Translations under genes and position numbers: made by a program | Source: Setoptus koraiensis | Taxonomy: Eukaryota; Animalia; Arthropoda | Direction of reading: 5' to 3' | Assembly (NCBI GenBank): GCA_048013815.1 | Contig: CM106586.1 | Coordinates: 12,214,001-12,278,000, forward strand | DNA: 64,000 nucleotides | Notes under the pieces: generated by a model | What the model saw: only the letters and a program-made list of their open reading frames with translations | Told to the model about the DNA's origin: nothing | Database searches by the model: none | Shown: positions 6,612-30,721 of the stretch, one piece after another | Layout: the number at the start of each line of letters is the position of its first letter | How positions within the stretch are numbered: the stretch's first letter is position 1

Positions 6612-7829
6612 GTATGATTTATATACTGCATACAAAGATTTATAAAAAAGAAAACAATCTATTACAATGGTCAGATTAGATCTATTATTAAATATATAAT
6701 TATATGTTCACCTCTTTGAGTATATTTACATTTGAGGAGCTACGAGGATAATTATATAGAGTTGATAATAATAATTACATAAGAGTAATATATAGATGAA
6801 TAAATTCAATACAATGTATTAATCAAGACGATGGCCTTCTATTGGGTGACGCGCTAATTCATTCAGTCCGCATCAACAACATGCCACTGCTATTCAGATT
6901 TCCTGAAAGGACCTGTATAGATAAACATGCTTATGTTGGTTAATGGTCACACCATAATGTAGCTCGTCATCGTGTCCGTCTATAGGTATATATAGGTTGT
7001 CCTTTAATGAGTTAAGATTATGCTTTGTGAGACTGCGCAAAGGTATTCATTGAATCGTTTTGTTACATAACCCGAGCAGTTTGCTTGGCCATAGACAAGA
7101 CGAAGATAGTGATCTAGCCACATAGATTAGATAAGAAGATCAAATGTTAAGTGTTACGTAGTGTTGTGCTTTCGTGTGTCTTATGCTCGATTGAATAAGT
7201 TGAAAGATGTATCAATAAAAGCTAGTAACTTTTTGAGATCTATCAGCAGAAGCAGCACCAACAAACACTACTGTAACAGTAACTTTGTTGTCTCATTCAT
7301 CAGAGATATGTCACATGGCTTAAATATAGTTCCCACTAAAAGATCAGAGCCGGAGTGCGTAGTCATCATCTAGCAAAAACACACACACGTCTGCACATTT
7401 ATTTGGTGACTAGTAGATAAATGTAAATTTTGTTTATATCAAGCGTGAGAGAAAAGAAGAGAGAGAGAGAGCGCCACATTAACTATATTCAAGTAAACAA
7501 AAAAGAAGCCAACTAGCCAACTATTTAGCAAACACACTGGTTTTGAATGAGTCAGAGCGACCAACTTTGATATAGGCGATTGTCAACAGCTATCCAAATG
7601 CGACTAAAAAAGTTCAACACAAACAAATTTATTATTATCGTTATTGCAACTATTATTAGTGGTGCTTAAAAGTGGACATAATAATACAACAAAACAATAT
7701 TGCAATTATCATTGCATCGTAAAGTGACAAACAAAGAGAAAATAATAAAATTGAGCAAAGGGCGAGCGGTAAAAGTGTAATCATATTCTCTATATTGTGG
7801 CATAATTAAAACATAGAGTGGTTATAAAC

Positions 7830-9619
7830 ATGGTGATACTCATTGAGATATCACGTACTGCAACAATAATATTATTATTCCAATTGGAAGTACTACTATT
7901 CATAACTATTTGCCTGAATTGTGTATATAGCAGCTCTGTTCCTTCGGCATTCTCAAAACAAGATGCCCCCTTTTGGAAACGGCCCGGCTGTCATATAGTG
8001 GGTGAGTGTTAAGCCATGTGTCAATGTTAGCAGTGGGCGCAAATAACTAGATACTGGACGCATAGCGACTGTGCACAATGAAAAAATAAAGTAATTTGCA
8101 TGATGTTGTTGTTGTTGTTGTGGAAAATTGATTGAATGATCCTTTAAAACTTTCATCTATATATAAGGTCACACGCGAACAATAGCCATACCTGGCTGTG
8201 TCAAATTTGATCTGACAACAAACGCATGCAGGGGATATTGCCTGTCGTACTCACTGCCATCCATTGAGGATATCGGGCCAGCTTTTGGCGGCGACAATGG
8301 CAGTTCGGATGCAACGCTAACACCAAACACAAATGTTGCCGCTGTGAGTCGGAACAACAATCAGGGCCCTAATCGGGGTGCCAATCAGAGGTTAGTAAAC
8401 AAGCTGTGACTTTAGAGTTGTTGACGTGATCAACATAACAACAGTATTGAACAAAAAACTATGATTTTGATTTGAACTCAAAATATGCTTAAAATTCATG
8501 TAGCGATCAAGATGTTTCATTGGTTGATAAGATGATAAAAACACAAGCATTAAAACGCGAATATTTGGAATCTATTTTATCCTCGATATCCAACGTACAA
8601 AACACAAACAATACGGGAAGCAGCTCTAGTGGCACCATCAACAAAGATGCATCATTATCGGCGCAATTCCTCCAACTGGTGGCTTTGCAACAAGCACGTG
8701 AAAAATCGCACATGTTATCACCTAATTTAAACAGCGGTAGCGACATTGACAGCAGCAGCAGCGGCACCAGCAGCAGTAGTAGCGGTGCCGCTAGTGACAA
8801 TAATAATCATAATACTAACTATGATAAAATAAATACCCAATCAACGACGCTAAACGACGCACCGGAAATCGATCCTGATCTCATAACATCCACAGGTCCA
8901 ATAGAGGCCAATCTTGTGCCCTCAGGATCAAAGCAAGACATAATATCAATTGGACAATGTTGCAGTATGATAGAAACAGAATACGTGAGTACTAAAAGCG
9001 CAACTTGACTTGATTAGTCTTGGTGGGGGAGTTATCAAGAAAGTGCTATATTGCTTATTGCCTAATTGATATTTATTGTCGCATGGCACTGATATTGAGC
9101 AGCTATCAGAAGTCATCTTGCTTGCTGTTTACCCTGATTAGCTATACAGCTTAACAACAGATAAGCATCGTCACTATACTAATCTAATCTATTTATCCAT
9201 CCATCTTGACAATGGCTCTCCCTGGTGTCGCCATCAATGGTCATGACACGTCACTTATCGCGACGCGTCATGTATGGTGACGATTAACAATGCAAATGCA
9301 AACAAAACAAACAAATTATACAAAAATGAAATGAATGTGCATACTGTCGTCGTGTGGTCGTTGATCTTGTACTTATGTCATAATCGGGTTACGTTACTTC
9401 TCAATGTTTCGTTCGTTTTCCATTTGCATCTCCATGTAAACCATCACACATACTAAACACATCTGCATGTACATGACGCGCTTATCATGATGATCAATAA
9501 CCAAACACGAACAACAACAATATCAGATTAAGGTAAATGTCAGATGCGAAAATGGCCTAAGGGATTACATATTCAAATCAGCAAAGAGTTGCGAGTGTTT
9601 CTTCTGTAAGAAAATGTAA
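7830..9619 (+). CDS. GPA2: Glycoprotein hormone alpha-2 (GPA2, thyrostimulin alpha), 4 exons (7830-8001, 8168-8390, 8504-8984, 9527-9619), 322 aa
   Basis: Spliced protein: signal peptide, then FWKRPGCHIVG/HTRTIAIPGCVKFDLTTNACRGYCLSYSLPS, a long insert, QDIISIGQCCSMIETEY, and IKVNVRCENGLRDYIFKSAKSCECFFCKKM. This matches the invertebrate GPA2 pattern with all 10 Cys. All three introns are GT-AG and phase-compatible (phases 1, 2, 0). Confidence 0.95.
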
Positions 9620-12600: not shown

Positions 12601-15600
12601 CTGATTACGGCCGATGGTCATTCGAATATTCACCCAACACATTACTAACATTATTTGCATGCACGAATATCCATCACCCAAGTGTGCCATGAGCACTTTA
12701 GTCCGCTACAACGAATATCCTATTATGTGTAGGAGGTGTTAGTTGACAGCCTACAACTATAACTATAGCAATAGAAGCAAAATAGTAGAGAACAGTTATA
12801 ATGATAACTTTGATTCTATTACGTCACATGCAGCTAGTCAGTCTATCATGCCAACAGCAAACAATTTGTTTGTTGGAGATTTTCATCTCACTGGCAATTA
12901 GATTAAATCATTTAGCTTACCGTGTTTATTTATGAGCCTCTGCAATCTATTCGGAATGTTAATCAGTATTTAGTGCACCTGTGATAATGTATTCTATCTG
13001 TTACTGGTTTGTTGGTTAGTTCTTAGAGCAAGCCATCACATTAGATGAATTACTTTGTTAGAGTCCCACTAATACCTATTTGGGTCCTTCTTTGATGTGA
13101 AAAACCCATCGATCACCATCTTGGTAATTACTATCTGGCACTTCAGCAACGAACAAACAGACAAATTGACCAGCACAACAACATCGTGTAAGCGCCCAAA
13201 ATAGAGTATAGTTAATCAATATTAATGGGAAGATTATGGGGTGATCGAGTTTGCAGCTATAATTTGCATAATACTGATCATCCAATTGGCCCCTGGCTCA
13301 CAGACAGTTATCGACAACTATAGAATGCTTCGGCAATAGGTCAAACACTATCTTTCACCAGCCGTTTATATATGAACGACCTTTGCACACCCAATGACGA
13401 GTCAAGTCTTCGGAGTCTGGGGCTTTCGGGTTTGTCTGGTTTGTCTTGTTCCACGAAGCGGACCTCAACGAAGCTCCACACCGACCTATACGAACACGAT
13501 TGCTCAATACACTGGTGTATCCTAAAGCCTATTTTAGGATTTCCTCAGATAATTCATCATTTCTATTGAAAATACCAACCTTTATAGTATCACAGTATCT
13601 ATAACAATGCATATAATTGATGAGATCAATTTCGTAAATACAAACTGTCTGAAACTGTGCTGATTACATCATGCGGTAGTAGATATCACGATGATAGTAG
13701 ACATCTTAAGAAAAAATTGGTAACGTGGTTTTCCAAATTGACCTTCCTAGAACTACAATCACGAAAAAATCCATCATATTTTCCTTCACATACCACGCTT
13801 CAGTTGATTGTGTGCTTTCCATGTTCTCAACGGTTTCGAAAGACTTGACGAGAACTTTTCTCAATCATTTGCTTCAATATCAGATGTTACTTATACCGAG
13901 AAGTGCAGGCTATTAAGGTTGAGTATTCTAGGTCCGGGTCTTTTCATCGACGTTTACTTCATCTAGAGTATGCTAGGCATTCATTTCGAGCCATATCCTT
14001 CTTTCAACTCATTTCTGCCGTGCACTTTTTATAGATCGGATTTCTCGATGCAACTTCTTAATTTCCTTGGTGATATACTTGTGATACGCTCTTGCTAGTT
14101 ATTATGTATCGTTTTTCTGGTCTAGCTTGATGTTCATTATTAATCAGAAGCTGACGTATAGTAGTTTAAAGCACTCATTAGCCTCGGGGACAGAGAATTT
14201 ATTTTGCCGCCTACAAACCAATTCAGAGTCGTTCTTGATAGAACGCATACAGGTCAGTTGATCCCCTCACACCTATCTCCTATACAGTTTTTTAGTTCAA
14301 GGAAAAAGACTGGGGAACCCGATAACTTCAGGATAAGCTGAAGGAATCCGATCGACTGAAAATGTGCTGAATAAATTCCAAGAGATCATTTACTGCAGAA
14401 AAAGCAGAGATTCCACAAATCTCTCTTATTCTCAGTAACCGCTGAACGACTTATGACAATTTCTGATAAGGAGATTAGACATCAAAACATTCTGAGTCAC
14501 AAAATCGAACACCACCAGACGGAATTATTATCATTTTGGAAAGCTTTTCGAACACTGTAATAATTCTGAGAAAACAAATTCCACAAAATAAGGCGACTGC
14601 ATGATAATGTAAGGAGCTTTCGGAAGAACATCCGAACCAACAAAACTCAAGAAGCGATAAAAATCAACTATCCACCATCAACCATGGGTACAAAAAAAAT
14701 ATGAAAAAGCTAAATTGTCATGCTGGCGTCGAGCAAAGAGAGGCCCTCAGCAGAGCGACTTGCAATTGGTCTATTCTCGGCAAGGCAGAATGCCTGGCCA
14801 AGCTAGATGAAGTCGTTCCCATTATGGGTGGAACAAACTAGTTCCGAGGGGCGGTAAGCTTCCACCACTCACCATTGCCAACAAAAATGAGCACTCAGAG
14901 GAGAAAATTTTGGTTGCCGCCTCCATAGTGTCTCGATGAAGCAACCATTTTCTCCTTAGCGGTTTCAATGACTGACTATTCTATTCGACGATGGTTTGAA
15001 GTGTCTGGTGGTACCGAAAATTCCTCTCAATGAATCGGACAACTTTTGTCTTGTTGTCACAAAGAAATTTCGAAATCTTAATTTATTGAGAGAAGAAAGA
15101 GGTTTAGTTGGATTTTTGGAGGCTCTCTTTGCAGAAATTTATTGTTGGCCCGAGAAAAAATTATGAAAAAAAGTTTGCGAGTTCAGATCCAATGTGAGCA
15201 CGAACACACACCAGATGCTGGTCTGTTGGTATGAATATGAATGCGATCTTCATAACAGGGTTGTATTTTTCTATTAAAACTTGTTATAGAGCACGTGAGT
15301 CTCATAGTGTAATTCATAAAAGACCTCAAGAAATATGAACAAATAAAATTAAATAGACAGACATAAGGTCCGCACATCAATAAATGGAATACGTTTCAAT
15401 TCGTGGAATTCGAGAACTCGTCCCATCTATTAATGTGAAGACTTTATCTCCTCACTTAAGAAGTGCCTAGTGGTGGTAACCTCTCATGAGCATCTGACAA
15501 GTCGAAAAAATACCTTGCATCCAAACATGGTCGAGCAATCTCTATCTTACCATATGTCATGAAAACGATCTGAGTCATGCGTAATTTTGCTCATAATGGT

Positions 15601-16636
15601 AATTATTTTTTCAAGCAAGGTCCTATCTCCGAAGAATGAGACAATTTTCCTCCAACATGATTATGATACTGTATACTAGAGTGTTGCACCCACCCAATCA
15701 AGGGACCGTGTGCCTTTTTATATGCCCTTTCACATACTTTCATTATGATGTCCAAACACGTTAGGTGGACGACCTGCACGACCTGTACCCCTGCATTGTT
15801 TGTGTTAATCGGATCTACTGGTCAACACAATGACCATTTATCAAAATGAAAAAAGCAATCAAATAGATTCTCCGACTACAAGGTGTGTAAACAATGTAAC
15901 AGCCTCTTCCATTCTTACAACTGATTGCTTCAACACATGGATGAACTCTACGTGAGACTTAGATGTCTCATCATTTCTAGACGTTGATGATGTTTAGTCA
16001 CGTAGACTCAAGGTTTGACCTTTTTTCCCTTCAGAATTCACTCAGTTCACTTTTCTGAAATATAAATTGATTTTCGGGGTATTTTCGCCCGTCACGAAAG
16101 AATTTCTATACTCGAACACTACAAATAAGTTGTAACCAACCACCCATACCGGTACATGGTAACATTACACAAGCAACTAATACATCGATTTTTGGGACGA
16201 AAAAAATTAGTTTACAACTCGGGTTGGCTATATCATTTAGTCACATCATATTCGGCATCTATGTTATAGAGTTTAATCCATCAATTTTACACGTACACTG
16301 CATTAGCAGTAAGGTTTTTACAGGTGTAAAACTCGAGTTAGGTATGATATGAGTGTTATAGACATTTGATAACGGCGAAATGTGATCAACAACAACAAAA
16401 TCCACTAAGAGCTTACATATAATCCACTCTGGACATGACTTCAAAGCAGACGGTTAACATTTGTTTCTAGCCAACCGATGTTCTTATTTATCTGACCAAT
16501 TGATCTAAAGAAAGTTCTTTTTGTTTGTTTGTTTGTTTTGTTTGAAGAATTATCAGATTAGATACTTTCATAGCAGTACATTATGATGATTTAAGGTTGG
16601 TTAAGTTCACATTGTGAGGAGTCAGATAGATGATAT

Positions 16637-18944
16637 TTATGGTAACGACGGGGGCGGATCTACTACTAATCCGCCCCGACAAACAGCATTAGAAGAGGAA
16701 CATTTTTGACAAGCGCAGTTAACGGCATCCATATAGTGATACAATCTCAACTCGGGATCAACAAATGATGACGTGCATTGTGAAAGTGTCGTCCTTCTCC
16801 TGATCCTATCCTTGTGAACACAAACGTAGTGTATAGACTTTTTGTGGGGGAAAAGCCAATCCGCGATCTAGATGTGCAATATTATTATTGTTTGTTTTTT
16901 TTTTTTTAGAAAAATGTCGCATACAAAAAATGAAAGAGTTGTTATAATTTGAATATCAACGACGATGGTAATACTTTGTTATTGGATTTAGTCTGCTTTT
17001 TCATCTTTTTCAACCACTCATACTCCCACGAGTTTCGGTAAATTGAATTCGCTGTTAAGCCCATCGAGTCTACTTTGTTGCTCTCATCAAATGTTTCGTA
17101 GATTCAAATGAAAAACGAAATCATAGTAATGCGTCAGCCTCTACAGCAAAAAAAAATCTGCGATTCCAGATAGAATTATTTGTCCTATCAATAGATCACA
17201 AGTAAAGTAGAAGAAATCGATGTCGTTCAAAGAGAAGACCATTGTGTAGCAGGCTTACCTCACCAGAATCGCATCGGCCATAACAGACATTAGCAGTTAT
17301 CTGTCCCCAGCATTTGTTGCCTTTTGTATCTGTCTTGACCGCTCTGTAAGTATATTTTCTCGTTTTACAAAGCACAGGATCACCCGTTTCTACCTCGAAA
17401 CCCAGATTTGACATCGGTTTTTCTGTAGAAGATACAGGTTTCGGTTGAGGCTGTTGTTGTTGTTGTTGTTGCCATTCCAAGAGCCGATCAATGATTGCAT
17501 CTCGTTCGTTTTCCTTGTGTAAATTCGAGGCGCTGGCTAGCTGTGGGCCTTCATCAGATGATATCGATTGCTGTTGTTGATGTTGCGAATTATTGAATCT
17601 GTCCGATTGTCCAGTCTGCTCTGGTTCAGACAATTGATAGCTGCTGCTGATGATAGCATCAGGTAATAATGTCATAGATATATTATTGGTTCGATGATTG
17701 GGAGATGCCGAGTCTGGGTTTATAATGGCATCGCTCTGAATGATAGTTTGATCTTGATTCTTCGATGATCTATTACTTTTTCGATCGATATTATCATCGT
17801 CAGTTATCTGTATTGGTGATTGTTGCATGCTAGTGGGCATACCAATTGGAGGCACAGGCCACAATAAGCTAGATCTAAGCTGTCTGAGTGAAGATGGAAC
17901 GTGGTCTTGAGGTAATGAAGACGACGTGTCGAGTAGATCTGATTTGAGTGGTCTTCTAACACGAAATTTGATTATCTGATTGCCATGCTTTGTTTGTCTG
18001 ACAAAAGCCGGCTGTTTTTGATAATTATTCTTTTTATTGTTGTTATAGTAGCCGTTTCTCCATTGCAAATAAACATTGCGATTTCTGTTGCTGCTGCTGC
18101 TTCTGTCGTTGTCAATTATTTGTTTTGTGTGTTTTATATGTTGTTTATAGGGGTGCTGATTATATGTACTCGTTTCTTGCTGCTGTTCGCTCAATCGGTC
18201 AAACAATTCGTACCGATCGTCAGATTCTTTCATTTGAGCATAGTCTCCGTCATAAGCCGGCGCATAGCTTGTTGATGATCGTTGTGGGCGAGTAAACTCT
18301 TGCAATAAATCTGGATCTGTCTCTAGCAGATAATTCAGAATTGTCAATTTTTGTTGCTCTTCGCGGCCCATAAACGGATGATTCATTGAATTCTGCGAAC
18401 CCTCATTGTTATCATTACTGGTCTTTCTGTCGCTATCTTGATCAATTTGATAGTATGGTTTTGTTTCATAGTTGTTCAACCCTTTTTCTGCAACCAGTTG
18501 CATTGGATCTAGCACTCTCAATTGTGGGTCATGATTCTTCGTTTTGTCTGGACTGTCCAGAGTTAGAACTTTGAAACTGTTTAGTTTGATGTCGTCCAGT
18601 TTATTAGTTTTGTTTGTTTGTGAGGTAGGTTGTTGTTGTCGTTGGTGCAATAAATATGGAGTTTCGTCGAGTAACTGATACTCAAATGAATGAAAGTCGT
18701 CTCGTTTCTTGTTTTCATCGGTGCCGCTTATTCTTGTCGTGTCAATGTTGTTAAGAATTATCAGAATCAAAAAAGCAATTAACGACGATAGAATCCAAGC
18801 AGAAGATGTTGATCTAGCTCTAAGCAAATGATAATGAATGTCTTTTCTTCGTTTCAAACAACTTCTGGGTTTTTCCGAAGAATCGCACAAATCCATTAGA
18901 GTGACCGCTGCAAGGATAGAATGTTTTGTTGCAGAGAAAAGCAT
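16637..18944 (-). CDS. GPB5: Glycoprotein hormone beta-5 (GPB5, thyrostimulin beta) with very long N-terminal pro-region, 2 exons (18944-17259, 16867-16637), 638 aa
   Basis: Exon 1 ends CKTRKYTYRAVKTDTKGNKCWGQITANVCYGRCDSGE at a GTAAGC donor. Exon 2 (absent from the ORF track) follows a CTAG acceptor and reads IADWLFPHKKSIHYVCVH...QC...YHYMDAVNCACQKCSSSNAVC. This is the GPB5 signature with 10 Cys. Confidence 0.94.
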
Positions 18945-21900
18945 ATTGACTGATCAACTCATCGATTGTCTGTTCACTGAACTTGGCTTGAGGCTCGCTA
19001 GAATTGCTAGCTGATCAAATGTTTTGGGAAGTTTTTTTCGGTGTTTCTATGGCTGCTGACTTATGTTCAATCAAGTCCAAACTTTTGTCTCTCGGATTTT
19101 CTATAACGCTATGTTGAACTGCAACTGGAAATTGTACTATCTATATTTAATTTGACCTTTCAAGAAATCAATTGAACATTAGTTTCACACACTAAAGGTC
19201 TCTCATGATCTATTGTAGCTATAGGTTTTCTGGTATCCATATTGTACAAAACGCTTTGATTCAAGATGTTCTGATTTGCAGACAGAAAAGCTTGCGACGA
19301 ATTATGCAGAAAATTCAGGTGCTTCTAATGAAGAGTGTTTGTCGACGTGAACATGTGCGCAATTGTGCAAATGAATTGTTCACGATGGAAATGCGATTAT
19401 GAAATTCGTGTTATGATGTAGTAGTATATTCATTCTGTGAGCTATTAATAACTTGCGTGACACAAACAAATTCTTCTCGGATTTACTGAGAGAGGTGAAA
19501 TTCGAAAATTAAAATGATGTTCTATCCATGCGAACAATATCCATATGTAGAGATTCTAATGTTAATTCGCTGCATATGCTAGATATTTGACCAATGTGCC
19601 GCTATGTCGCATCATGTTGTTGTGTCTCTATTACGAGAATTCTTTTCCACAACGAATGCTACAATGAATTTGGGCTTTGGCTTGCTAGGTGGGGGCAAGT
19701 GGTAAATTGAATCACAGCGAATAGATGAATGAAAGCGAAACACGATCTACTAACAGGCACCAAGAAAACACAGTGCGCATGATCCTGTATGTGAATTGTT
19801 CCGACACTTTAGCAACAGAACTTGTTCACAAGTGTACGCCTTAAAGAATCACGACCACTCAACTGAATTGATTATATTGATGATAGATTGTTTGGAACCA
19901 TGGTAAGCTAAAATGATGCAATTAAACTTATTATTCACTCCAGCTTCTGTGATAAGCGCTGACGTCATATATACATGAATAGGCAATAGATTGTCATGTT
20001 GGCTAGAAACTGTCGTCTCGCTTCGCTCGGCATATAGTTAGCCATGCGCCAATTGTTCTTTTTTGTACCTCTTTGCTGTCTAAAAACTAAAAACGAGGCA
20101 ACATAGAAAAAGAAAAATCAATTATCCATGAATGATAGCAACAGCGGTGTTGCTTTGATCGAATTAAGATCTAACCATTAGATCGATGTAGAATTTCCTA
20201 TGTGGAGGTTCCCACTCGAAAAGTAACAGCCCCAGAATAAAACCAAGTATAGAGCGTTCTAATAGAAATTGACGACTGGCAGTGACTCTCTATAAACATT
20301 TCTAAACGTCGTTACTACAAGAATCCGATACTGTTCAACTAGAAGAGATACTTCTGAAGAAAAACGCTCTATATTAGTTATAGTAAATTAGTAATGCTAA
20401 GGTACATTTGTGCAAGACATGACATTGAAGCCAGGCTAGTGTTTGAGCAATCGTCGCACGAGAATTCCAATAGATATAGAATCCAGCCACGAATCATGAG
20501 GAAATTCTCTAGTAAGCAGAGGAATGAATTTACCGGAATTCATTAGAAAACAAAAAAAATAGCAAATGGTCGATTGTTCGAAATATTAAATTAGTGTCAA
20601 AGTTCAAGATCTTGGCACAACTGTCTCAACTGCAATCACTACTGTGTCGGTTGATTTGTTTGTTTTAGACACCTAGTGTACTAAAACCAATGTTAACTCC
20701 AATGTTGATGAAGATCGAAATATTAAAGATTTGCATTCGATGTTTAATATTCAACATTTTGAATTTCTATCAATTATTCGATTTCCTGATGCTCAACGTT
20801 CAATAAGAAACCAACCTGATGCTTCGTCGATATTGTGTGCTGTAGAGATTCCTAACGTTGACCGAACGAAAAAGCACAAATAATCTATTGATTGCTTGCT
20901 GATTTTCATTTACTCACTGTCACAATTTGAATAAATTCCTTTCTGACTAAATCTCTCGCGTCAGCTATTATTATATAACCATCATACTACCTGCATTCTT
21001 ACTGGAATACTAAATGATCTAAATCTCTTTAACAGATGGCGCCACATGCAACTTAGAAATATCTCCGATTTCTATTATATAATTGTATGATTATCAAAAT
21101 GCAGCAAGAATTCCAAAAGATTGTTTTCGGAATAGGTGTTAGAGATGTAGCGGACGACCACTTTCATGTCTATAAGGACGTTGAACGGTGTCACTACTCA
21201 AGGTTGTCGAGGTCGGAAGGGATGCCGAGTATATTGAGCAAAAATAGTAACCCTTATTACAGGCATATGTACAAGTTACTGAAACAACGAGGCGTGACAT
21301 ATAACTGAATTAATAAAGAACTTGTTTGTAACTTATGATTTCATTTTTCCATACAATATTCGTGAATCAATCATGTAGAAACGATTAGAAAAAGTTCATC
21401 GTCCGGTCCGCCTACCTACTACAAAGTAGTCACTGAACGACTTGGGGGGCGATTCTCCCCTATGTTCAAAGATATCTCTGAGTTCTTAAAACACAGAAGT
21501 GGTGTCTTTTGGCGAAGTTGGCGAATTCGTATTGGAAATATCCCATTTGGGTAGGCTCTCTGCAATCCTCAATGTTGCACATTTCTATAAATCATCTAAC
21601 CTACAAGGTTACCGCAATGTTCATTCAATAAGTCTCAACTGTGCTGAATTTCAACGAATTTCATTAATATTGTATCGAAAAATTCCGGTAGAATATTGCA
21701 AAAAGTCGGCAAAAAGCGGGCATGGGAATAGCGTATTCGTTCTCAGCTCGATCAGCCGAGAACAGATAGGCTATAGCCAGCCTCTTCTGACACTACCACC
21801 TAACTAGGTTACCTTGCTAGATAAAACATGCAACCCTCGCGCACACTTTGTTCAACTTGACTTGCCCCGCTGAAAAATACTTTCGCTGACACGATCTCCG

Positions 21901-23372: not shown

Positions 23373-23872
23373 NNNNNNNNNNNNNNNNNNNNNNNNNNNN
23401 NNNNNNNNNNNNNNNNNNNNNNNNNNNNNNNNNNNNNNNNNNNNNNNNNNNNNNNNNNNNNNNNNNNNNNNNNNNNNNNNNNNNNNNNNNNNNNNNNNNN
23501 NNNNNNNNNNNNNNNNNNNNNNNNNNNNNNNNNNNNNNNNNNNNNNNNNNNNNNNNNNNNNNNNNNNNNNNNNNNNNNNNNNNNNNNNNNNNNNNNNNNN
23601 NNNNNNNNNNNNNNNNNNNNNNNNNNNNNNNNNNNNNNNNNNNNNNNNNNNNNNNNNNNNNNNNNNNNNNNNNNNNNNNNNNNNNNNNNNNNNNNNNNNN
23701 NNNNNNNNNNNNNNNNNNNNNNNNNNNNNNNNNNNNNNNNNNNNNNNNNNNNNNNNNNNNNNNNNNNNNNNNNNNNNNNNNNNNNNNNNNNNNNNNNNNN
23801 NNNNNNNNNNNNNNNNNNNNNNNNNNNNNNNNNNNNNNNNNNNNNNNNNNNNNNNNNNNNNNNNNNNNNNNN
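23373..23872. other. Assembly gap (500 N)
   Basis: Run of N read directly; the round length suggests a placeholder of unknown true size. Confidence 0.99.
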
Positions 23873-26800
23873 AGGTGGCGGCGTTGCCGCTCTAGTCTTT
23901 GGGTTGGGTGCAGGACCAGTGAGGTGTGGGGGGTGAATGGGGCAGCTTGCACAGCATGCAGGATCGCGGCGGGGGAGGGGCGGGAGGTTGTGTGTGGAGC
24001 GTGGGTGGTGTGACGAGGGGTGCGGGCGGGGAGGGGCGGTGAGCAGGGGGCGTGGTGACGGGCGCGGGTACACGCACGTGTATACGGGCGGGTGGCAATG
24101 GGGTGATAGCGCAGGCAGTCGTGGGGCTGTGGCGGGTTGATGCTCCTGCGTGTCAGGATGGGTATCAGGGGGTGGGGGAGGGGTTGGGCGTGCGTAGCGG
24201 GTCAGAGCAGGGTCATGAGAGTGGTGGCAGGGGGGGTAGGGGCGGGTGGTAAATGGGCGGGCGTCTGGGTGTGCTGGGCTGGCTGGGGGGGTGGGGGGCC
24301 AGGGAGTGGGCTTGAGGCTGGGGACGGTCTGTCGCCAGTTGTTGGCCTCTGGTTTGCACAGCGGTGTGATCTTGGGGTGCTGGGGAGGGGGCGGTAGAGT
24401 CGTGTTTCCTCGATAGTTAATCTTCGTTTATTAGTGTGTTCTTCTTACTCGAAGTGTCTTTTGTTCTTTATGGTCTTATTGCAAGTCAGTTATTCTTTTT
24501 TGTGTTTATTCCTGATTCGGTGTTGTCCTTTTTCGTGTGTGCTACATGTGTTGCTGGAGTCGATATTTTTTTGAGTCGATCCGACGTGCTATGAGTTTTA
24601 CAGCTTCTTGTAGGCGCGGGTAGGCGGGACGGGGGAACGGATTGCGGGGGGTGGTCGCCCGGGCAAGTTAGGGGGATCACGACCATCGTTGGGGGGGACA
24701 GAGGGGGGTACGCAAGCAGGGGTTAGTTGGGCATGGGGAGTGGGGTGTAAGGTGGGGGGTGCGCGTGTGGGGGGTTGGTGGGAGATGGGGTGTGGGTGCG
24801 GGTGTCGAGGTACAGTGGAGTGCGGTGTGCTTCAGTCTTTTTTGCGATCTAATGTTTTTAACGTGGAGAATCGTGAGGGCTTGTCATGGCCGGTGTTTTT
24901 TGGTGAGTTTTACGTTGTCGTTGCAGTACTTTTTGTGCTTTGCTATCGTCCGCGTTGGGCGCTACGAACAGGGGGTGGGTAGCGTTTGTTTTGTTGTATT
25001 CGAGTTTGTGCGGCTTATTTTTAAATGGGGTACATGTATCCATCGGTTGTTTTCCCCTGCGTTCTTTTTTAACGTGTACTGGCGGATGTTCTCTCCGTTG
25101 TTTCTGTTTTCTTTCTTAGTATTGTTTCATTTCACTTTTGCTTTGCGTTTTTTCTTTTTGTGATTTTTACTACGGCTTAAGTTTTTTTTCTGCGTTGGTG
25201 TTTGTTTTGGTGCGGGGCTGGAGGGTGGGTGGTTTCGGGGGGCGGAGGGATGTGAAGTGCGCGGGAAGGGGGGGAAGGGAGGGTGCCAGTGGTGGGCGCC
25301 GGCTGGAGAGGGGGTGCGGGGGGCATGGTTGCGGATTGTTGTGGGGAGTGGTGCTGGCGCTGCACGGTTGGCGGGCGCGGGTTTAAGATGGTTGGGGTAA
25401 TTTGAGGGGGTAGGCGCCTGACCAGGCGGGGGAGAGAGGGGTCGGGAGCGCGGCTGTGTGGGTGGGTGGGTGTTGTGTGTCGTGGGTTTTGTTGAGTTGG
25501 CAGAGTTGAGTGCGGTCTGCGGAGGGAGCGAGGGGTGCAGGGATGGGGTGGGGCAGGGGAGTGGTTGGATTGCGTTAGTCGTGCAGGCACGGTGGGGTCC
25601 GTTTGTGTTCGTGGGGTCGGTGTTGTAGGGTGGGCTGGGCTGGGGGTTCGGTTGGGTGGGGTGGACTGGTTTTGTTGATAGGTGCGTGTGTCTAGCTCGG
25701 ACGTCCCTCGTCCGGGTGGGGGCGCGAGGGGAGGGTGAGTCCCCGGATGGCAGTAGTGGGGGGAGTTGGGGGGCGGGTGGGAATGTGGACGGGAGGGTCG
25801 GGGTTGTGTTGGGGCGGGGGGTGTTGGTGGGGTGCTATTTCGTTCTTCATTTTAAGTTTAAGCCCCGTTTTGAGTTGTAGTCGTCATGGCCTCCTTCGTT
25901 TTTGTCGTGAATGTTTATACACTTTTGACTTTTCGGTTTTGTTCTGCTGTGCGTCGATGTTTTGGTGTGTCTGTCATTCCGCTGATGCGGGGGTGACGTG
26001 GTGTGCAGAGAGGTGGGCTTATTTTGTGTGCTGTCTGTGACTTGAACTTGGCTGATTCTCGTCGTGGAGGGAGGGTGGTAGGTGGCACGGTGCGCAGGGG
26101 CCCAGGGGGTCTGCCAGGTGAGTGGTGGGGTGCGGGTTGGATCCGTGGGTAACCCTGGTTGGGCGACAATTACTGTGGTGGGGGGAGGCCGGAGGGTGCG
26201 TCGGAGGGGACGGGAATGGTGGCGGGCTGGTGGGGGGTGGGGGGGGGTAGGTGGGGTTCGTTGAGGCCGGGCGGGGGTGAGTAGTATGGGGGTGGGGTGG
26301 GTAAGGGGTTGTGGGGTAGGGGTGGGGGGTCGGGGAGTTGGGGGTGGGGGCGGGGGTGAGGGGAGGTTGGGACGGATGGCAGAGATGGAGGTATGATGGC
26401 GGGTATTGTGAGTGGACAAGGGCAGCCACAAGGGTAGGGGCGGGGGCACAATTGGGGGGAGTGGGTCAGGGGTAGGTGAGGGGGGGTAGTTGGTGGAGGC
26501 GCAGGGGATGAGTGGGGGGGGGAATGCGGGGGGGTCGGGAGGGAGAGTGGGGTGTGGGGAGATTAGGTGGGGGTCGGTGACTCTGGCTTCGATGGGACGT
26601 CCTAGTTGTGAGCATTGGCCGTCTAGTTCGTGGGGGAGGCTGTGTGGGCGTCCTCTGGGGGGCGGGGGCACATTGACTTCTTTGGGTTCGGGTCGTGGAG
26701 CTCTGGCACGGGTGACGATTCTTCGGTGGGGCTTTGGGGTTGCGTGTTTTTTTCGCCTGGGGGGCGAGTTGTGAGGCTTTTTTTGGTTGGTGTTTGGTCC

Positions 26801-29290
26801 GTCGCTATTTGTGCATCCGGCTGGCCGGTTCGTGTTCGGGTGTTTCGGTACTATAAAGCGTGTCCTGTTTGTTATTGTGTTGCACTTTCATTCGTGGTGT
26901 ACTTTAGGCTTTTGATAGTTCTGTTCTCGAAGGTGTTGAAGCAGGGTGCGGGCAATTCGTTCTTGATCCGTTTTTTGTTTTATCTTTATTACCCCTTTGT
27001 AGATAATATAAGGAGGGTGAGGGTGGAGCGTGAGGGGTGCGTCTCGATTTGGCACGGGGGAGGGAGATCGGAGCATTAATGTGTGCACACGGGATGGGCC
27101 GCGGTTCGCATGTACAGGGGGGGTTTCGATTGGCCAGCTGATCCTTATGCTGTTTTTTAGGGCTCGGGGGTCGGTTTGGAAGGTTCCTCTGCGTCTACAT
27201 TCCTTGGAGTTGGGTTTTAATCATGTATTTGGATACCCTAACGATAGCTTACCCTTTGGGGGTGCGATTTGGTTTAGTATTTATCTGTATTTTATGGTTG
27301 TCGGATCGTTCAGCGGGCTGAGTAGGCGGGCGAGGGATGGGGTGGGACATGGGTAGGGGAAGGTAGGAGGGAGGGTGGTTGGGGTGTGGTGGTGGGTGTC
27401 GGTATGACCACTGTGGGACGGGGGGTCGCAGGGCGGGGCAAGTGGGTGTTTAAGTGGGGGGGGGGGATGTATTGGGTGGGTTCAGGCGGGGTGGGCTTTG
27501 TCCGTCTCTCGTTGGGCAAGGGAGCTGCTTTGTTGTTTGATTAAGGCTTTTGGGATTGATCGGTGTGCTAAATATTCCCGTAACGTATGCTACGATTTAA
27601 TGTTAGTTAATGGTTGTTTTCGTGGTGGGGAGCCGGGGGGTTGGTCGATGGGGTGCGAGTTGTGATTCTGGCGTTTCATCGGGTGTATTGGGATGGTGTG
27701 TCTTGAATTTCACGTTATGTTGGTGCGTAAGCGAATGGGCCGTTGTGTGGACGTAGTTATTAGTTGGGCTGGTTTGCGGCGGTTTTTTGGTTTGTTTCTT
27801 TTTGTCTATTCTTAGAGATTGATTCTTTGTAATCTTTTACTTTTGTTTGTTGTCTATATTTTATTTTTTGGGCTGGTGTTTCGTGGGTGCGTAGTGTGAG
27901 GGCGAGGGCTGGGGCGGGGGCTGATGCTTAGCGCTGTTCCTAAGCGATTGGTCCGTTGTACGAATGTGTGGCGACCTCGGTGATTGGTAGGCGGTAAGCA
28001 CGGATCGCTGTGAGTGGGTAGAGGGGAGGGGGATAATTGGAGGGGCACGACGGAAGCGGTGCGTCTGTTGTGCGTGGATGGTCACGCCTGGGTTTATTGG
28101 TCCTGTCACGGGCAGGTCACGGGTGGGAGGGGTGGGGTGGGGACAAGGAGGAGGCGACGGATTGGGGGTGATGGTTAGGACCAAAGCGTAGTGGGAGCGC
28201 GGCGTAGTGAGGTCTGGGCGGGGTGGCTTGGGGCGCGATGGATGGGTGCGGGTGGTGGAGGGCCAGGCTGTCTTCGGGGGGGGAAGAAAAGGGGGCTGGA
28301 TGGGGGCTGGGGGGGGGATCGGGGGGAAGGGTGGTGGATGTGCGGGAGTTGGGCGGGGTGAGGTGTAGTCACGTGGCAGGCGGTGGGGGGTTTGTCGTGC
28401 AGGGCAAGTATGTGAGAAGTGGGTGTGCGGGCACAGGGGGGGGGGAGGTGGGGGGGGTTGCAGTGGGGTTATGCGTGGTGAGTGGGGGGGGGGAGGGTTG
28501 TGGAGGGTTTAGGAGGTGGGGTGGGTGTCGGGCGTGGTGGGGTTTACGTTTACGTGGTAGGGTGTCTGTCGGGCGTCTGCCGACGTTTGCGCGTGGTTTC
28601 GTAGGCTTGGTCTGTGTGCATGGGGGGTTTTGCGGGGGGGGGTCAGTTGATGGAGGAAGGGGTTTAGTGTGTGGGAACGGGGCACAAGGATTGGGTGGGG
28701 GGATGGGTGTGTGCATCGTCGGGGGGGGAGTGGGTGGGTGAGTGCGTCAGTTAGTCAGGTGGAGGGGGATGGATGGGTGGGTGTCGCGGTTCTGGTTTTG
28801 AGTACCCGGAGGGAAGGGGCGGCTGAATTGCCCGCTTAGTAGCGGCGTGTATACGGGGGGTCGGGTGCTGGGGGGTCGATAGTGTGGGTTGTGTGCTTTA
28901 TGTTATCTTGCGGTTTATAGATGTGTCGTGGATTTTTTTGTCGTTTTTCGTCCACGTGTGGCCTTATTTTGGAATATCGATCTTGAGCTGAGTGCTTCGG
29001 TTGTGGAGTGGTGTGCCGTTTTGGCGGTTAGGTCGGTCATATGTGGCCGGTCGATTTTATTTTGTTGGTCCCTTCGAGGTTATTGGTGGTGTATGAGGGT
29101 GTGTGAGCACGGAGTGGTTTGCCACTTTGTATGTCGTAGGGGTTTGAGTAGACGTAGTGGCGCGCAGCCGAGTGAGGGGGGGAGTCTCGGGGGGGCCTGG
29201 TGGAGTGGAGTGGTGAGAGGCACGGGAGATGCGCCGGGATGTTTCCGTGTTTTTTTTCGCTCTTTTTTTTTTCTTTTTCTTTTTTTTCAT
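23873..29290. other. G/T-skewed aperiodic low-complexity block, probably low-accuracy read or gap-fill artefact
   Basis: Composition switches abruptly at the gap edge to G-run-rich, A/C-poor sequence on the + strand. There is no repeat period, and only Gly/Val/Trp (+) or Pro/His/Thr (-) junk ORFs. It is unlike the AT-rich flanks. Confidence 0.75.
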
Positions 29291-29342
29291 TCTTTTAGCG
29301 GCTCTTCCTTTGGTTCTTTGTATTTATATTTGTTTACTTTCT

Positions 29343-29504
29343 TCGAAGTTGTTCCGATTGATGGATTTGGAAAGAGAGCGATACTCGGGAAGAATATCTT
29401 ATCTGATAAACGACACAAGTTTGGAGGACGTCTTTCTCACATTCGCCCGGTTTTTCGAGCACAATGGCGTAACAAATGACACGGTAATACCAATCGCACC
29501 ATGA
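29343..29504 (+). CDS. C-terminal fragment of an ABCA-subfamily ABC transporter
   Basis: SKLFRLMDLERERYSGRISYLINDTSLEDVFLTFAR resembles the conserved ABCA tail (LF..ME......Y.VSQTTLEQVFL.FA), followed by a stop at 29504. The upstream body is missing, replaced by the G-rich block. Confidence 0.65.
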   Translation, partial: SKLFRLMDLERERYSGRISYLINDTSLEDVFLTFARFFEHNGVTNDTVIPIAP

Positions 29505-30721
29505 CACTATATTCACACCACGAATCCTCATGTATAACAAATGAAAGCTCACGTAGATTCCTTACTTAAATTTATTGTTAACAGTTACATCTGCTTTATT
29601 CACTGATTGTTTGTGTTGTGGTAATATGTATCTCCCACAAGGAAATAATTTTCAAATTACCAATATAATCCAGTTAGAAACATTAAGAAAATTAAATATA
29701 GTAACAATATAAATATAAAACGGCACTATCGATCAAGATGGCGATACAAATATTAGTTACATTGATAGTATGGAGGGTAGTTTGTCAAAAATATATCTGT
29801 CAATATCTATCACTATTCTCTAATTTATTGTATTCTGCATCAGGCAGAATCTGTTGAACCTGATGGTCTTCAATCTCATCCATTTTTCACATTCTATTCA
29901 ATTGATTGTCTCCATAGTGTAGTTCGTAGCAATATATCATGCTCTACAGAATTTGATTATAGTTCATTCTTTTATGAGCAATTCGAACATGCAACGATTG
30001 TTGAATATATCGGAAGATTAACATTACATCAGTAATGCTATAATTTGTATCACACCCGGTATAATACTACTGACACAATTAGTATTGTAAAATCCTTTGA
30101 AAATATAGGCCGAGTCGCGCATTGCATTTCACTTCCGTTTACCTAACACAGAACCACAACTTTCATTGAAGCGCACAGAACAATTGTATCTCGATGTCAA
30201 GCTTCTTATGTAATGTATCATGACCAGACACATTAATCTTTCTCTCTGATACACTCTTTGTCTTTATTGACAATAGACTCATTCAAGCGATCGGCTGATT
30301 TAATGTGATCAAAATTCATCTTGTAGAGAAAAAAATTTCTGCTCGATCGATAGACTCACGCATGACGAAGCAGAGAAAAAAAACATATTGATTTGAAACT
30401 GACGTTCATGTTTATTTTTTGAATGTTCACCATGCGGTACAAGTGTACGATGGTTTACTTCGTAGTTGTAGATTCGTGGATTGATTATGCACCGTGGAAA
30501 GTCTCTAGTATAAAAGCAACTGCCACGAAGAATGAGGCACAAAATAATCGAAATACTGTTTCAATTTAATGAGACAACACAAAATGCAAGTTTGGAATTC
30601 TATTTCCTCTAGATGGAATACTCTTTACGGCATGGAGATCATGTACGTAAAGGGTTGATCATCAAAAAAATAATCATCGCCTTATTTCTAGAATTTGTTT
30701 CTAGACCATGGGCTATATCAG

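What the first reader, a model, noticed from the sequence alone, without database searches (positions are those of the whole stretch)
17370..18944. GPB5 carries a pro-region of about 520 aa with a signal-anchor-like segment and furin-type sites
The only strong hydrophobic stretch (AWILSSLIAFLILIIL, residues 49-64) follows a basic patch (KRRK...RAR), the layout of a type II signal anchor or very long signal peptide. The following region contains KKR, RPQR, RVRR (an optimal R-X-K/R-R furin site) and RQLR before the cystine knot. Inference: a membrane-tethered or latent pro-GPB5 released by convertases, like TGF-beta or neurotrophin precursors, possibly also releasing extra peptides. This is not how GPB5 is usually described.
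Basis: partly seen in the sequence, partly recalled or inferred. Interest (0 to 1): 0.72.

Follow-up and report, generated by a model that had tools for sequence, protein, structure and literature searches.

The report
Mite GPB5 hormone with giant N-terminal extension
This eriophyoid-type mite's only copy of the hormone subunit GPB5 (thyrostimulin beta) really does carry about 525 extra residues ahead of its cystine knot, a trait shared by a whole divergent clade of relatives, but the extra part looks like a fast-evolving disordered spacer, not a TGF-beta-like prodomain, and whether it is membrane-anchored or cut by convertases is still open.

Summary
A minus-strand frame of 562 codons (18944-17259) has no stop, against 27-45 in each of the other five frames (P about 2e-16). 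It ends at a GT donor. A cDNA-like contig from public run X4 joins 17259 to 16867 exactly. Other X4 contigs lie inside the long region, up to 18718.

The knot is GPB5. The profile hits named thyrostimulin beta-5 proteins at about 1e-45, and this is the genome's only such locus.

The only strongly hydrophobic stretch is residues 49-64, after a basic 32-48 residue head. KKR81, RPQR222, RVRR331 and RQLR357 are all present.

- The 460-residue spacer has no homologue among 1.84 billion proteins. It has no cysteine and is predicted disordered.
- Basic motifs are no more frequent than in shuffles.
- No basic site lies within 168 residues of the first Cys.

Long extensions of 150-530 residues are nevertheless a clade trait. 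23 of 24 divergent "Y-type" GPB5 sequences have one, including Fragariocoptes setiger, against 2 of 132 classical ones. Relatives mostly start with a classical cleavable signal peptide. This gene and P0005 instead have a long basic head, no clear signal-peptidase site, and a basic site 13-15 residues after the hydrophobic stretch.

Verdict: a new variant of a known hormone. Membrane tethering is plausible but unproven.

The parts
18801..18944 (-). Start codon (M1; alternative M17 at 18896) and basic, probably cytosolic head, residues 1-48, with KRRK31-34, RAR42-44 and two Cys (20, 29)
   Evidence: an in-frame stop lies 4 codons upstream of M1, and there is no Met between residues 17 and 148. 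No RNA contig covers this part.
18753..18800 (-). Hydrophobic segment, residues 49-64: the ER-targeting signal, either a signal anchor or the h-region of a long signal peptide
   Evidence: KD19 2.27, the only window above 1.6; AlphaFold helix 48-71; relatives carry their signal peptide at the equivalent place
17370..18752 (-). Cys-free, Q/S/D/N-rich extension, residues 65-525. It holds KKR79-81 (18710-18702), RPQR219-222 (18290-18279), RVRR328-331 (17963-17952), RQLR354-357 (17885-17874) and a short predicted helix 477-493 (17516-17466)
   Evidence: pLDDT below 50 over 68-192 and 213-472; no homologue outside the knot; X4 cDNA-like contigs at 18057-18248 and 18398-18718; the helix region aligns weakly with P0012
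17259..17369 (-). First half of the GPB5 cystine knot, residues 526-562 (Cys 526, 545, 554, 558), ending ...CDSGE before the GT donor
   Evidence: 63% identity to Fragariocoptes setiger exon 2; hairpin 527-555, pLDDT about 80
16868..17258 (-). Phase-0 intron (gt...ag), 391 nt
   Evidence: X4 contig 26 joins 17259 directly to 16867, and X4 has no coverage inside the intron.
16637..16867 (-). Exon 2: second half of the knot (76 codons, 6 Cys) plus the stop at 16639-16637
   Evidence: PF00007 Cys_knot, E 5.3e-05, 23.9 bits; 52% identity to F. setiger exon 3
16240..16433 (-). Probable 3' UTR
   Evidence: X4 contig 25, 100% identical, lies downstream of the stop. Contigs do not show strand.

Best explanation
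This is the precursor of the mite's single GPB5 (thyrostimulin beta-5) subunit. It belongs to a divergent 'Y-type' clade in which a long N-terminal extension lies between the ER-targeting signal and the ten-cysteine knot.

Shown:
- The 562-codon exon 1 is open, transcribed, and spliced to exon 2.
- The knot is GPB5, and this is the only GPB5 locus in the genome.
- The extension has no homologue and no Cys, and is predicted disordered.
- Relatives have extensions of about 150-530 residues with almost no sequence conservation.

Inferred:
- The segment at residues 49-64 inserts into the ER membrane with the basic head on the cytosolic side (positive-inside rule). The extension and knot therefore lie in the lumen, where the knot can pair with GPA2, which is encoded 7.5 kb away.
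- The extension acts as a fast-evolving flexible spacer or tail. It is not a folded, latency-conferring prodomain.
- Release step, my lean at about 55:45: in this species the segment is an uncleaved type II anchor. The hormone would then be freed by a proprotein convertase in the stalk, at juxtamembrane KKR81 or at RVRR331 or RQLR357. The alternative is ordinary signal-peptidase cleavage near T69-G74.
- Either way, the secreted subunit probably keeps at least the last 168 residues of the extension, because no basic site lies closer to the knot.
For: - Reality of the frame: 0 stops against 27-45 in the other frames, P about 2e-16.
- Transcription and splicing: the exact 17259|16867 junction, plus collinear contigs inside the extension at depths (5.4, 6.0) no lower than the knot contig (4.1). 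There is no coverage of the intron or of 18886-21000.
- GPB5 identity: exon 2 hits PF00007. The alignment A1 profile hits thyrostimulin beta-5 of ticks, spiders, insects and crustaceans at 1e-45 to 1e-35. It also hits the C. elegans Cys_knot chain 8enb_B and TSH/FSH beta in the PDB.
- Single locus in the 48.8 Mb genome.
- Clade trait: 23 of 24 Y-type knots have the first Cys more than 120 residues from the start, against 2 of 132 W-type. Y-type is one group with 100/99 support on a long branch. All 22 Y-type proteins score above any W-type against both exon halves.
- Relatives: the closest named one, Fragariocoptes setiger, has a signal peptide, about 200 residues, then the knot. P0042 is an intronless ORF in a genomic contig with signal peptide, about 230 residues, then the knot.
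- Disorder and lack of conservation.
- Anchor lean: relatives have C-x-A|Q-Y type cleavage motifs. This gene and P0005 lack them. Both have heads of 47-48 residues with no alternative Met and upstream in-frame stops. Both carry a basic site 13-15 residues after the hydrophobic stretch (KKR81 here, RQRR78 in P0005).
- Convertases exist: five P-domain loci in the genome.
Against: - No RNA contig covers 18719-18944, so the start, the head and the hydrophobic segment are not shown to be on the mRNA.
- X4 is called RNA only from its behaviour. Its contigs give no strand and no ends.
- 17376-18056 and 18249-18397 are uncovered, so an in-frame internal intron cannot be excluded.
- The strictly apolar run is 16 residues, which lies between typical signal-peptide and transmembrane lengths. 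T69, T70 and G74 could serve signal peptidase.
- Basic motifs are at chance frequency and their positions are not conserved.
- The clade motif R-x-x-R-S-[DE], found 51-60 residues before the knot in 7 relatives and at -128 in an eighth (8 of 22 in all), has no basic counterpart at that distance here (SNLHKEN). Homology of RQLR357 to it rests only on a MAFFT placement.
- Only two variant sites were seen in the ORF, one synonymous and one I380M, so selection on the extension is untested.
Confidence: 0.68

Rival explanations
1. Latent pro-hormone of the TGF-beta/neurotrophin/PTTH type. A functional prodomain would keep GPB5 inactive or chaperone its folding. Furin would remove it at RVRR331 and/or RQLR357, and the fragments between basic sites would act as extra bioactive peptides.
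For: - The layout is signal, then long region, then C-terminal knot.
- RVRR is an optimal furin motif.
- R-x-x-R-S occurs twice here. A related motif, R-x-x-R-S-[DE], is conserved in 8 of 22 relatives.
- MAFFT aligns LRQLRSSLL with RNRRRSELL, RSQRRSELL and LRWQRSELL.
- Convertase genes are present.
Against: - No site lies within 168 residues of the knot, whereas such proproteins are cut directly before the mature domain.
- The region is predicted disordered. It has no homologue and no similarity even to F. setiger.
- Motif counts are at chance.
- R-X-[KR]-R is absent from 13 of 22 relatives and varies in position in the others.
- There is no Gly-dibasic amidation signature.
Confidence: 0.12
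2. The extension is not part of the hormone. The functional mRNA would use another 5' exon with a short signal peptide spliced close to the first Cys, for example at the AG at 17424-17423. The long frame would then be 5' UTR, a retained intron or a minor isoform.
For: - A pyrimidine-rich AG lies 53 nt upstream of the Cys526 codon.
- X4 contig 26 stops at 17375.
- Nothing covers 17376-18056.
- About 3.5 kb of ORF-poor DNA lies upstream.
Against: - A 525-codon frame kept open in phase with the knot (P about 2e-16) would be unexplained.
- X4 depth inside the extension is no lower than on the knot exon, while the true intron has none.
- 23 relatives have the same continuous layout, including intronless P0042 and the 661-residue P0005.
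- No junction or loose end was seen at 17375-17423.
Confidence: 0.07
3. A classical secreted GPB5 with an unusually long signal peptide that is simply cleaved, leaving a soluble hormone with a long inert N-terminal tail. No membrane tether and no convertase step would be involved.
For: - Relatives (F. setiger, P0007, P0033, P0042) have ordinary cleavable-looking signal peptides at the same place.
- The apolar run of 16 residues is within the signal-peptide range.
- I67-x-T69 or I72-x-G74 could satisfy the -3/-1 rule.
- Basic motifs are at chance frequency.
Against: - The head of 32-48 residues is far longer than usual n-regions.
- The C-x-A|Q-Y motif of relatives is lost.
- AlphaFold draws a 24-residue helix at 48-71.
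- The parallel with P0005, which has a long head plus the juxtamembrane RQRR.
Confidence: 0.3

Closest known systems
Classical arthropod GPB5 / thyrostimulin beta-5 (e.g. Drosophila melanogaster Gpb5, 169 aa, P0094; Oppia nitens 156 aa, P0060; Ixodes 145 aa, P0047)
   Same: It has the same ten-Cys knot, with Y-x-Y after Cys1, C-x-G-x-C-D-S/T-G-E-I-A-D-W, V-C, Y-x-Y-x-[DE]-A-x-x-C-x-C-x-x-C. It has the same phase-0 intron after CDSGE. A GPA2-like gene lies nearby.
   Different: Classical proteins have a 20-30 residue signal peptide followed within about 20-100 residues by the first Cys. Here the first Cys is residue 526. The knot is of the divergent Y-type (C-Y-G-R-C, D-W-L-F-P-H-K-K-S-I-H in place of C-W-G-R-C, D-W-R-F-P-F-K), on a branch of length 1.7.
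Fragariocoptes setiger hypothetical protein KAG9510956.1 (P0004), an eriophyoid gall mite
   Same: It is the closest named relative: 63% and 52% identity over the two knot exons, with the same intron position. It too has a long extension of about 200 residues before the knot.
   Different: Its extension is shorter, is split by an extra intron, and starts with a classical short signal peptide (MRCHRF..., then the h-region, then VQYE). There is no detectable similarity in the extension. The deposited model appears to miss both the signal peptide and the true last exon (L005:7471-7668).
Unnamed 661-aa Y-type GPB5, P0005 (Logan contig of SRR10674624, L001)
   Same: It has the same overall layout: a 47-residue basic head with no other Met, a 15-residue hydrophobic stretch, a basic site 13 residues later (RQRR), about 435 further residues, then the knot.
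   Different: It is GC-rich and unrelated in the extension sequence, which contains Cys residues. The organism is unknown.
Cystine-knot proproteins cut by furin or other proteases (TGF-beta/BMP, NGF/BDNF, insect PTTH, Spaetzle); established knowledge
   Same: An N-terminal signal, then a long pro-region, then a C-terminal cystine knot. R-x-x-R motifs are present.
   Different: Those have a conserved, structured prodomain and a cleavage site directly before the mature domain. Here the region is unconserved and predicted disordered, and the nearest basic site is 168 residues from the knot.
Type II membrane ligands shed by furin in the stalk (ectodysplasin-A, BAFF, APRIL); established knowledge
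   Same: A basic cytosolic head, a single N-proximal hydrophobic span, a flexible stalk with R-X-K/R-R, and a C-terminal receptor-binding domain.
   Different: The fold family is unrelated (TNF homology domain). Membrane anchoring and shedding of this protein are inferred only.

Membership tests
GPB5 / glycoprotein hormone beta (PF00007 Cys_knot) | Match to the Cys_knot family model | tested here: met
   Exon 2 alone scores E 5.3e-05, 23.9 bits, against a cut-off of 24. Full-length Y-type relatives score 26.7-33.1 bits. The joined two-exon model was not scanned.
GPB5 / glycoprotein hormone beta (PF00007 Cys_knot) | Ten-cysteine pattern and GPB5 signature motifs, with named GPB5 as the nearest relatives | tested here: met
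   Both exon halves align in register in A1. The A1 profile finds 131 proteins; the named ones are thyrostimulin beta-5 or glycoprotein hormone beta 5, at 1e-45 to 1e-21. The best PDB hit is 8enb_B, then TSH and FSH beta.
GPB5 / glycoprotein hormone beta (PF00007 Cys_knot) | Conserved intron splitting the knot after C-D-S-G-E | tested here: met
   The splice 17259|16867 is seen in X4. F. setiger, P0025, P0159 and P0004 ORFs run into an intron at the same residue.
GPB5 / glycoprotein hormone beta (PF00007 Cys_knot) | Classical precursor layout: short cleavable signal peptide close to the knot | tested here: not met
   The first Cys is at residue 526, and the only hydrophobic stretch is at 49-64 after a basic head. 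This concerns architecture only; it does not argue against orthology.
GPB5 / glycoprotein hormone beta (PF00007 Cys_knot) | Single orthologue with a GPA2 partner gene | tested here: inconclusive
   There is only one GPB5 locus. GPA2-like exons (PGCH.VG / GHTR..IPGC....TNACRGYC / ..CC..) lie on the + strand at about 7806-9005. The Pfam Hormone_6 six-frame search found nothing, and its controls did not ring either.
GPB5 / glycoprotein hormone beta (PF00007 Cys_knot) | Heterodimer activates the LGR1 receptor | not testable with these tools
   This needs a receptor assay.
Convertase-activated cystine-knot proprotein (TGF-beta/NGF/PTTH type) | Basic cleavage site directly N-terminal of the mature knot | tested here: not met
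   The nearest R-x-x-R (RQLR354-357) is 168 residues before Cys526. The last 168 residues have no R-x-x-R; their only dibasic pair is RK388-389.
Convertase-activated cystine-knot proprotein (TGF-beta/NGF/PTTH type) | Conserved, structured prodomain | tested here: not met
   There is no homologue outside the knot among 1.84e9 representatives. pLDDT is below 50 over most of residues 68-472. E exceeds 0.5 against the F. setiger extension.
Convertase-activated cystine-knot proprotein (TGF-beta/NGF/PTTH type) | Cleavage motifs above chance and conserved among relatives | tested here: inconclusive
   Counts are at chance, and the position of R-X-[KR]-R is not conserved. However, R-x-x-R-S-[DE] recurs in 8 of 22 relatives: 7 at -51 to -60 and one at -128. 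RQLR-SSLL may be related to it.
Type II signal-anchor protein | Positively charged N-terminal flank ahead of the hydrophobic span | tested here: met
   KRRK31-34, R42 and R44 precede the hydrophobic stretch, and no acidic residue lies between residues 36 and 67.
Type II signal-anchor protein | Hydrophobic span long enough to cross the membrane, with no signal-peptidase site | tested here: inconclusive
   There are 16 apolar residues, about 20 counting S/T flanks, and AlphaFold draws a helix at 48-71. The C-x-A|Q-Y motif of relatives is missing, but T69 and G74 are possible -1 residues. No SignalP or DeepTMHMM was available.
Type II signal-anchor protein | Membrane association shown | not testable with these tools
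   This needs expression and fractionation.

The most novel reading that the evidence does not exclude
In a clade of acariform mites the thyrostimulin beta subunit has become a type II membrane protein. The cystine-knot hormone domain would sit at the end of a disordered stalk of 200-460 residues and would be released, or presented in a juxtacrine way, under convertase control. This would be the first membrane-tethered glycoprotein-hormone subunit, and this gene and P0005 would be its clearest examples.
Probability: 0.25. Interest if true: 0.72.

Novelty: new variant of a known kind. Interest (0 to 1): 0.5.

Why it matters
GPA2/GPB5 (thyrostimulin) is the ancestral glycoprotein hormone of bilaterians. 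It is always described as two small secreted subunits.

A whole clade in which the beta subunit carries 150-530 extra, rapidly evolving residues raises concrete questions about how the hormone is folded, paired and released in these animals. In at least two members the usual cleavable signal peptide is replaced by an anchor-like segment.

Two practical points follow:
- Length-filtered or signal-peptide-based neuropeptide annotation pipelines will miss or mis-model these genes. The deposited Fragariocoptes model seems to lack both the signal peptide and the second half of the knot.
- Eriophyoid mites are crop pests, so their endocrine ligands are of applied interest.

Tried and rejected
- Word-index protein search with exon 1. 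There was no hit at E 0.01 or better. The 8000 candidates scored were probably swamped by low-complexity words.
- Word-index search with exon 2 alone. There were no candidates; the length limits and divergence make this blank uninformative.
- Pfam on the raw 582-aa ORF. No family was found.
- Pfam Hormone_6 six-frame search for GPA2. It was blank, and the controls were blank too, so it is uninformative.
- ESM Atlas look-alikes. Only the knot was recognised, at scores below 0.8.
- Cluster look-ups for names. Only P0004 carried a name.
- Literature. No paper describes a long or pro-GPB5. SRR10674624 is in no paper.
- Selection from variants. There are only two differences in the ORF between the window and runs X2/X3, one silent and one I380M, which is too few.
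- The idea that this is a second, paralogous GPB5-like gene. Rejected, because the genome has one locus only.
- The idea that RVRR or KKR are conserved processing sites. Rejected on position.
- The idea that the F. setiger extension is homologous in sequence. Not supported.
- The joined two-exon protein was not sent to any search, fold or family tool. The exons were searched separately by reference. One local script placed the two exon translations end to end, only to number residues and compute hydropathy.
Full report
**1. What is in the sequence**

On the minus strand an ATG at 18944 opens a frame of 562 codons that runs to 17259 and ends ...C-D-S-G-E before gtaagc. An in-frame stop lies four codons upstream of the ATG. 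After a 391-nt gt...ag intron, a second exon (16867-16640, stop at 16639-16637) completes a ten-cysteine knot.

The long frame has no stop, while the other five frames over the same 1686 nt have 27-45. From the local base composition, 35 stops are expected, giving P(0) of about 2e-16.

- The only strongly hydrophobic stretch is residues 49-64 (Kyte-Doolittle 19-residue mean 2.27, next best 1.21).
- It follows KRRK31-34 and RAR42-44.
- KKR79-81, RPQR219-222, RVRR328-331 and RQLR354-357 are present.
- The first knot Cys is residue 526.
- Residues 65-525 contain no Cys and are rich in Q, S, D and N.

**2. Is it expressed and spliced as read?**

No run is catalogued as RNA. One same-species run, X4, behaves as cDNA:
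- Its contig 26 joins 17259 directly to 16867, exactly the predicted splice.
- Its other three contigs lie at 16240-16433 (beyond the stop, probably 3' UTR), at 18057-18248 and at 18398-18718. The last two are inside the long region and collinear with the genome.
- It has nothing in the intron, nothing from 15200 to 16239, and nothing upstream of 18886.
- Word depths inside the extension (5.4 and 6.0) are not lower than on the knot contig (4.1). The extension therefore does not look like intron or pre-mRNA.

The limits are that contigs give no strand or ends, and coverage is patchy. 18719-18944 (the start and the hydrophobic segment), 17376-18056 and 18249-18397 are not covered. Runs X1-X3 cover the intron and are DNA.

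**3. What the knot is**

- Exon 2 alone matches Pfam Cys_knot (E 5.3e-05, 23.9 bits against a cut-off of 24).
- An exhaustive phmmer search with exon 1 against 1.84 billion representatives gave 43 hits. Nearly all of them matched only through residues of about 490-562, the first half of the knot.
- Both exon halves align in register with these proteins (A1).
- The A1 profile retrieves 131 proteins. The named ones are thyrostimulin beta-5 or glycoprotein hormone beta 5 of ticks, spiders, horseshoe crab, sea spiders, crustaceans, insects and molluscs.
- In the PDB the best hit is chain 8enb_B, deposited as a Cys_knot domain-containing protein, followed by TSH and FSH beta.
- A six-frame search of the whole 48.8 Mb, two-contig genome with the Oppia nitens GPB5 finds only this locus. 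It is therefore the orthologue, not an extra paralogue.
- GPA2-like exons lie on the + strand at about 7806-9005.

**4. The extension is a clade trait**

Among the proteins gathered, knots fall into two kinds.
- 132 are classical 'W-type' (C-W-G-R-C, D-W-R-F-P-F-K). All but two have the first Cys within 120 residues of the start.
- 24 are 'Y-type' (C-Y-G-[GR]-C, D-W-L-F-P-H-K-K-S-I-H). 23 of these have the first Cys 150-530 residues from the start. The exception is a fragment from a 997-nt contig.

Y-type is one group with 100/99 support on a long branch. Every Y-type protein scores above every W-type against both of our exon halves.

The only named member is Fragariocoptes setiger KAG9510956.1, from an eriophyoid gall mite. 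Its knot exons are 63% and 52% identical to ours, with the same intron position. I could not name the species.

Reading the F. setiger contig shows a short classical signal peptide (MRCHRF..., then the h-region, then VQYE). About 105 residues follow, then an intron, then about 95 residues and the knot. The deposited model starts at an internal Met and misses the true last exon.

P0042 is a single intronless ORF in a gene-dense genomic contig: signal peptide, about 230 residues, then the knot. P0007 and P0033 are similar. A continuous signal-extension-knot precursor is therefore the rule in this clade. This argues strongly against the refuting scenario of a short signal exon spliced next to the knot.

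**5. What the extension is like**

- It has no homologue outside the knot in the exhaustive search, and no Pfam family.
- It has no significant similarity even to the F. setiger extension (E above 0.5).
- AlphaFold2 (single sequence) gives pLDDT below 50 for 68-192 and 213-472.
- AlphaFold2 draws a helix at 48-71, short helices at 194-209 and 477-493, and a confident hairpin at 527-555.
- The Atlas model of relative P0011 is equally poor.
- The helix at 477-493 aligns weakly with P0012.

This is the profile of a fast-evolving disordered spacer, not of a folded prodomain.

**6. The basic sites**

Against 5000 shuffles of residues 67-525:

| Motif | Observed | Expected | P |
|---|---|---|---|
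| R-X-[KR]-R | 1 | 0.16 | 0.15 |
| R-x-x-R | 3 | 1.4 | 0.16 |
| Dibasic pairs | 6 | 6.0 | not enriched |

R-X-[KR]-R is absent from 13 of 22 long relatives and varies in position in the rest.

A clade motif does exist. R-[LFW]-[HQ]-R-S-[DE] occurs in 8 of 22 relatives, 7 of them 51-60 residues before the first Cys and one at -128. The per-sequence chance is 3-9%. At that distance our protein reads S-N-L-H-K-E-N, so the arginines are gone.

Our RQLR357-SSLL lies 172 residues before the knot. MAFFT places it with RNRRR-SELL, RSQRR-SELL and LRWQR-SELL. That placement, and the low shuffle probability of R-x-x-R-S-[DES], are post hoc, and I rate the homology as possible only.

No R-x-x-R lies within the last 168 residues before the knot, and the only dibasic pair there is RK388-389. 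If a convertase acts, the product still has a long tail. There is no Gly-dibasic amidation signature. Convertases themselves are available: five P-domain loci.

**7. Signal peptide or anchor?**

Relatives with complete N-termini mostly show a hydrophobic core ending in C-x-A followed by Q-Y or Q-L, a textbook signal-peptidase site.

Our protein and the 661-residue P0005 differ from them in the same way:
- Each has a 47-48 residue basic head, with no Met closer than residue 17 here and none at all in P0005. Upstream in-frame stops were verified.
- The hydrophobic run is 15-16 residues. No small residue closes it in ours; P0005's ends in I-L-A, a possible -3/-1 site.
- Each has a basic site 13-15 residues later (KKR81 here, RQRR78 in P0005).

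By the positive-inside rule the head should stay cytosolic and the rest enter the ER lumen. I cannot run SignalP or DeepTMHMM here. I lean 55:45 to an uncleaved type II anchor with release by a convertase in the stalk. The mechanistic analogues would be furin-shed type II ligands such as ectodysplasin-A, not TGF-beta. Ordinary cleavage near T69-G74 remains quite possible.

**8. Verdict**

- The precursor is real and unusual, and an anchor-like signal is plausible.
- The TGF-beta/neurotrophin-like latent prodomain, the 'optimal furin site' argument and the extra peptides are not supported.

I found no description of long GPB5 precursors in the searchable literature. I file it as a new variant of a known hormone subunit, shared by an uncharacterised clade. 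The scan had noted this same stretch before, but not on other DNA.

**9. Procedure notes**

The two-exon protein was never sent joined to a search, fold or family tool; the exons were used separately by reference. One local script put the two translations end to end to number residues and compute hydropathy.

Noticed in passing
L005:5716-7668 (Fragariocoptes setiger JAIFTH010000047.1): The deposited model KAG9510956.1 (228 aa) seems mis-built. It starts at an internal Met, although the same ORF holds a classical signal peptide 73 codons upstream (MRCHRF...). It also replaces the true last knot exon (L005:7471-7668) with unrelated sequence.
   Followed up: partly
P0011, P0012, P0024, P0039, P0042, P0017, P0002 (Y-type relatives): A short Cys motif, R-[VL]-[IV]-C-[VL]-P-[FY], recurs near the start of many Y-type extensions, about 40 residues after the signal peptide in P0042. 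It is absent from the window's protein, whose extension has no Cys.
   Followed up: no
window 7806-9005, + strand: GPA2-like exons (PGCH.VG; GHTR..IPGC...TNACRGYC; ...GQCC...) lie convergent with GPB5, with an ordinary short signal peptide and a long S/N-rich stretch before the CC. The Pfam Hormone_6 six-frame search did not detect it.
   Followed up: partly
window 24001-30000: This block has GC of 0.51-0.58, GC skew of +0.44 to +0.53 and AT skew of -0.22 to -0.45, in an otherwise 0.38-GC window. Minus-strand ORFs at its edge are Pro-rich (PRPSPRP...). Bases around 23400-23900 read N. No tandem repeat scored 200 or more.
   Followed up: partly
window 18953-18961, minus strand: A two-codon upstream ORF (ATG AGT TGA) ends 6 nt before the GPB5 start codon.
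   Followed up: no
L002 (Logan SRR29837433 contig, 19.8 kb): In this relative the Y-type GPB5 (P0042) is intronless. It sits between a PX-domain gene and a 1214-aa Ig/FN3 (Dscam-like) single-ORF gene, which suggests a very intron-poor, compact genome.
   Followed up: no
runs X2 and X3: The two runs give identical contigs, depths and variants, so they look like one data set filed twice under different organism codes. They should count as one source.
   Followed up: no
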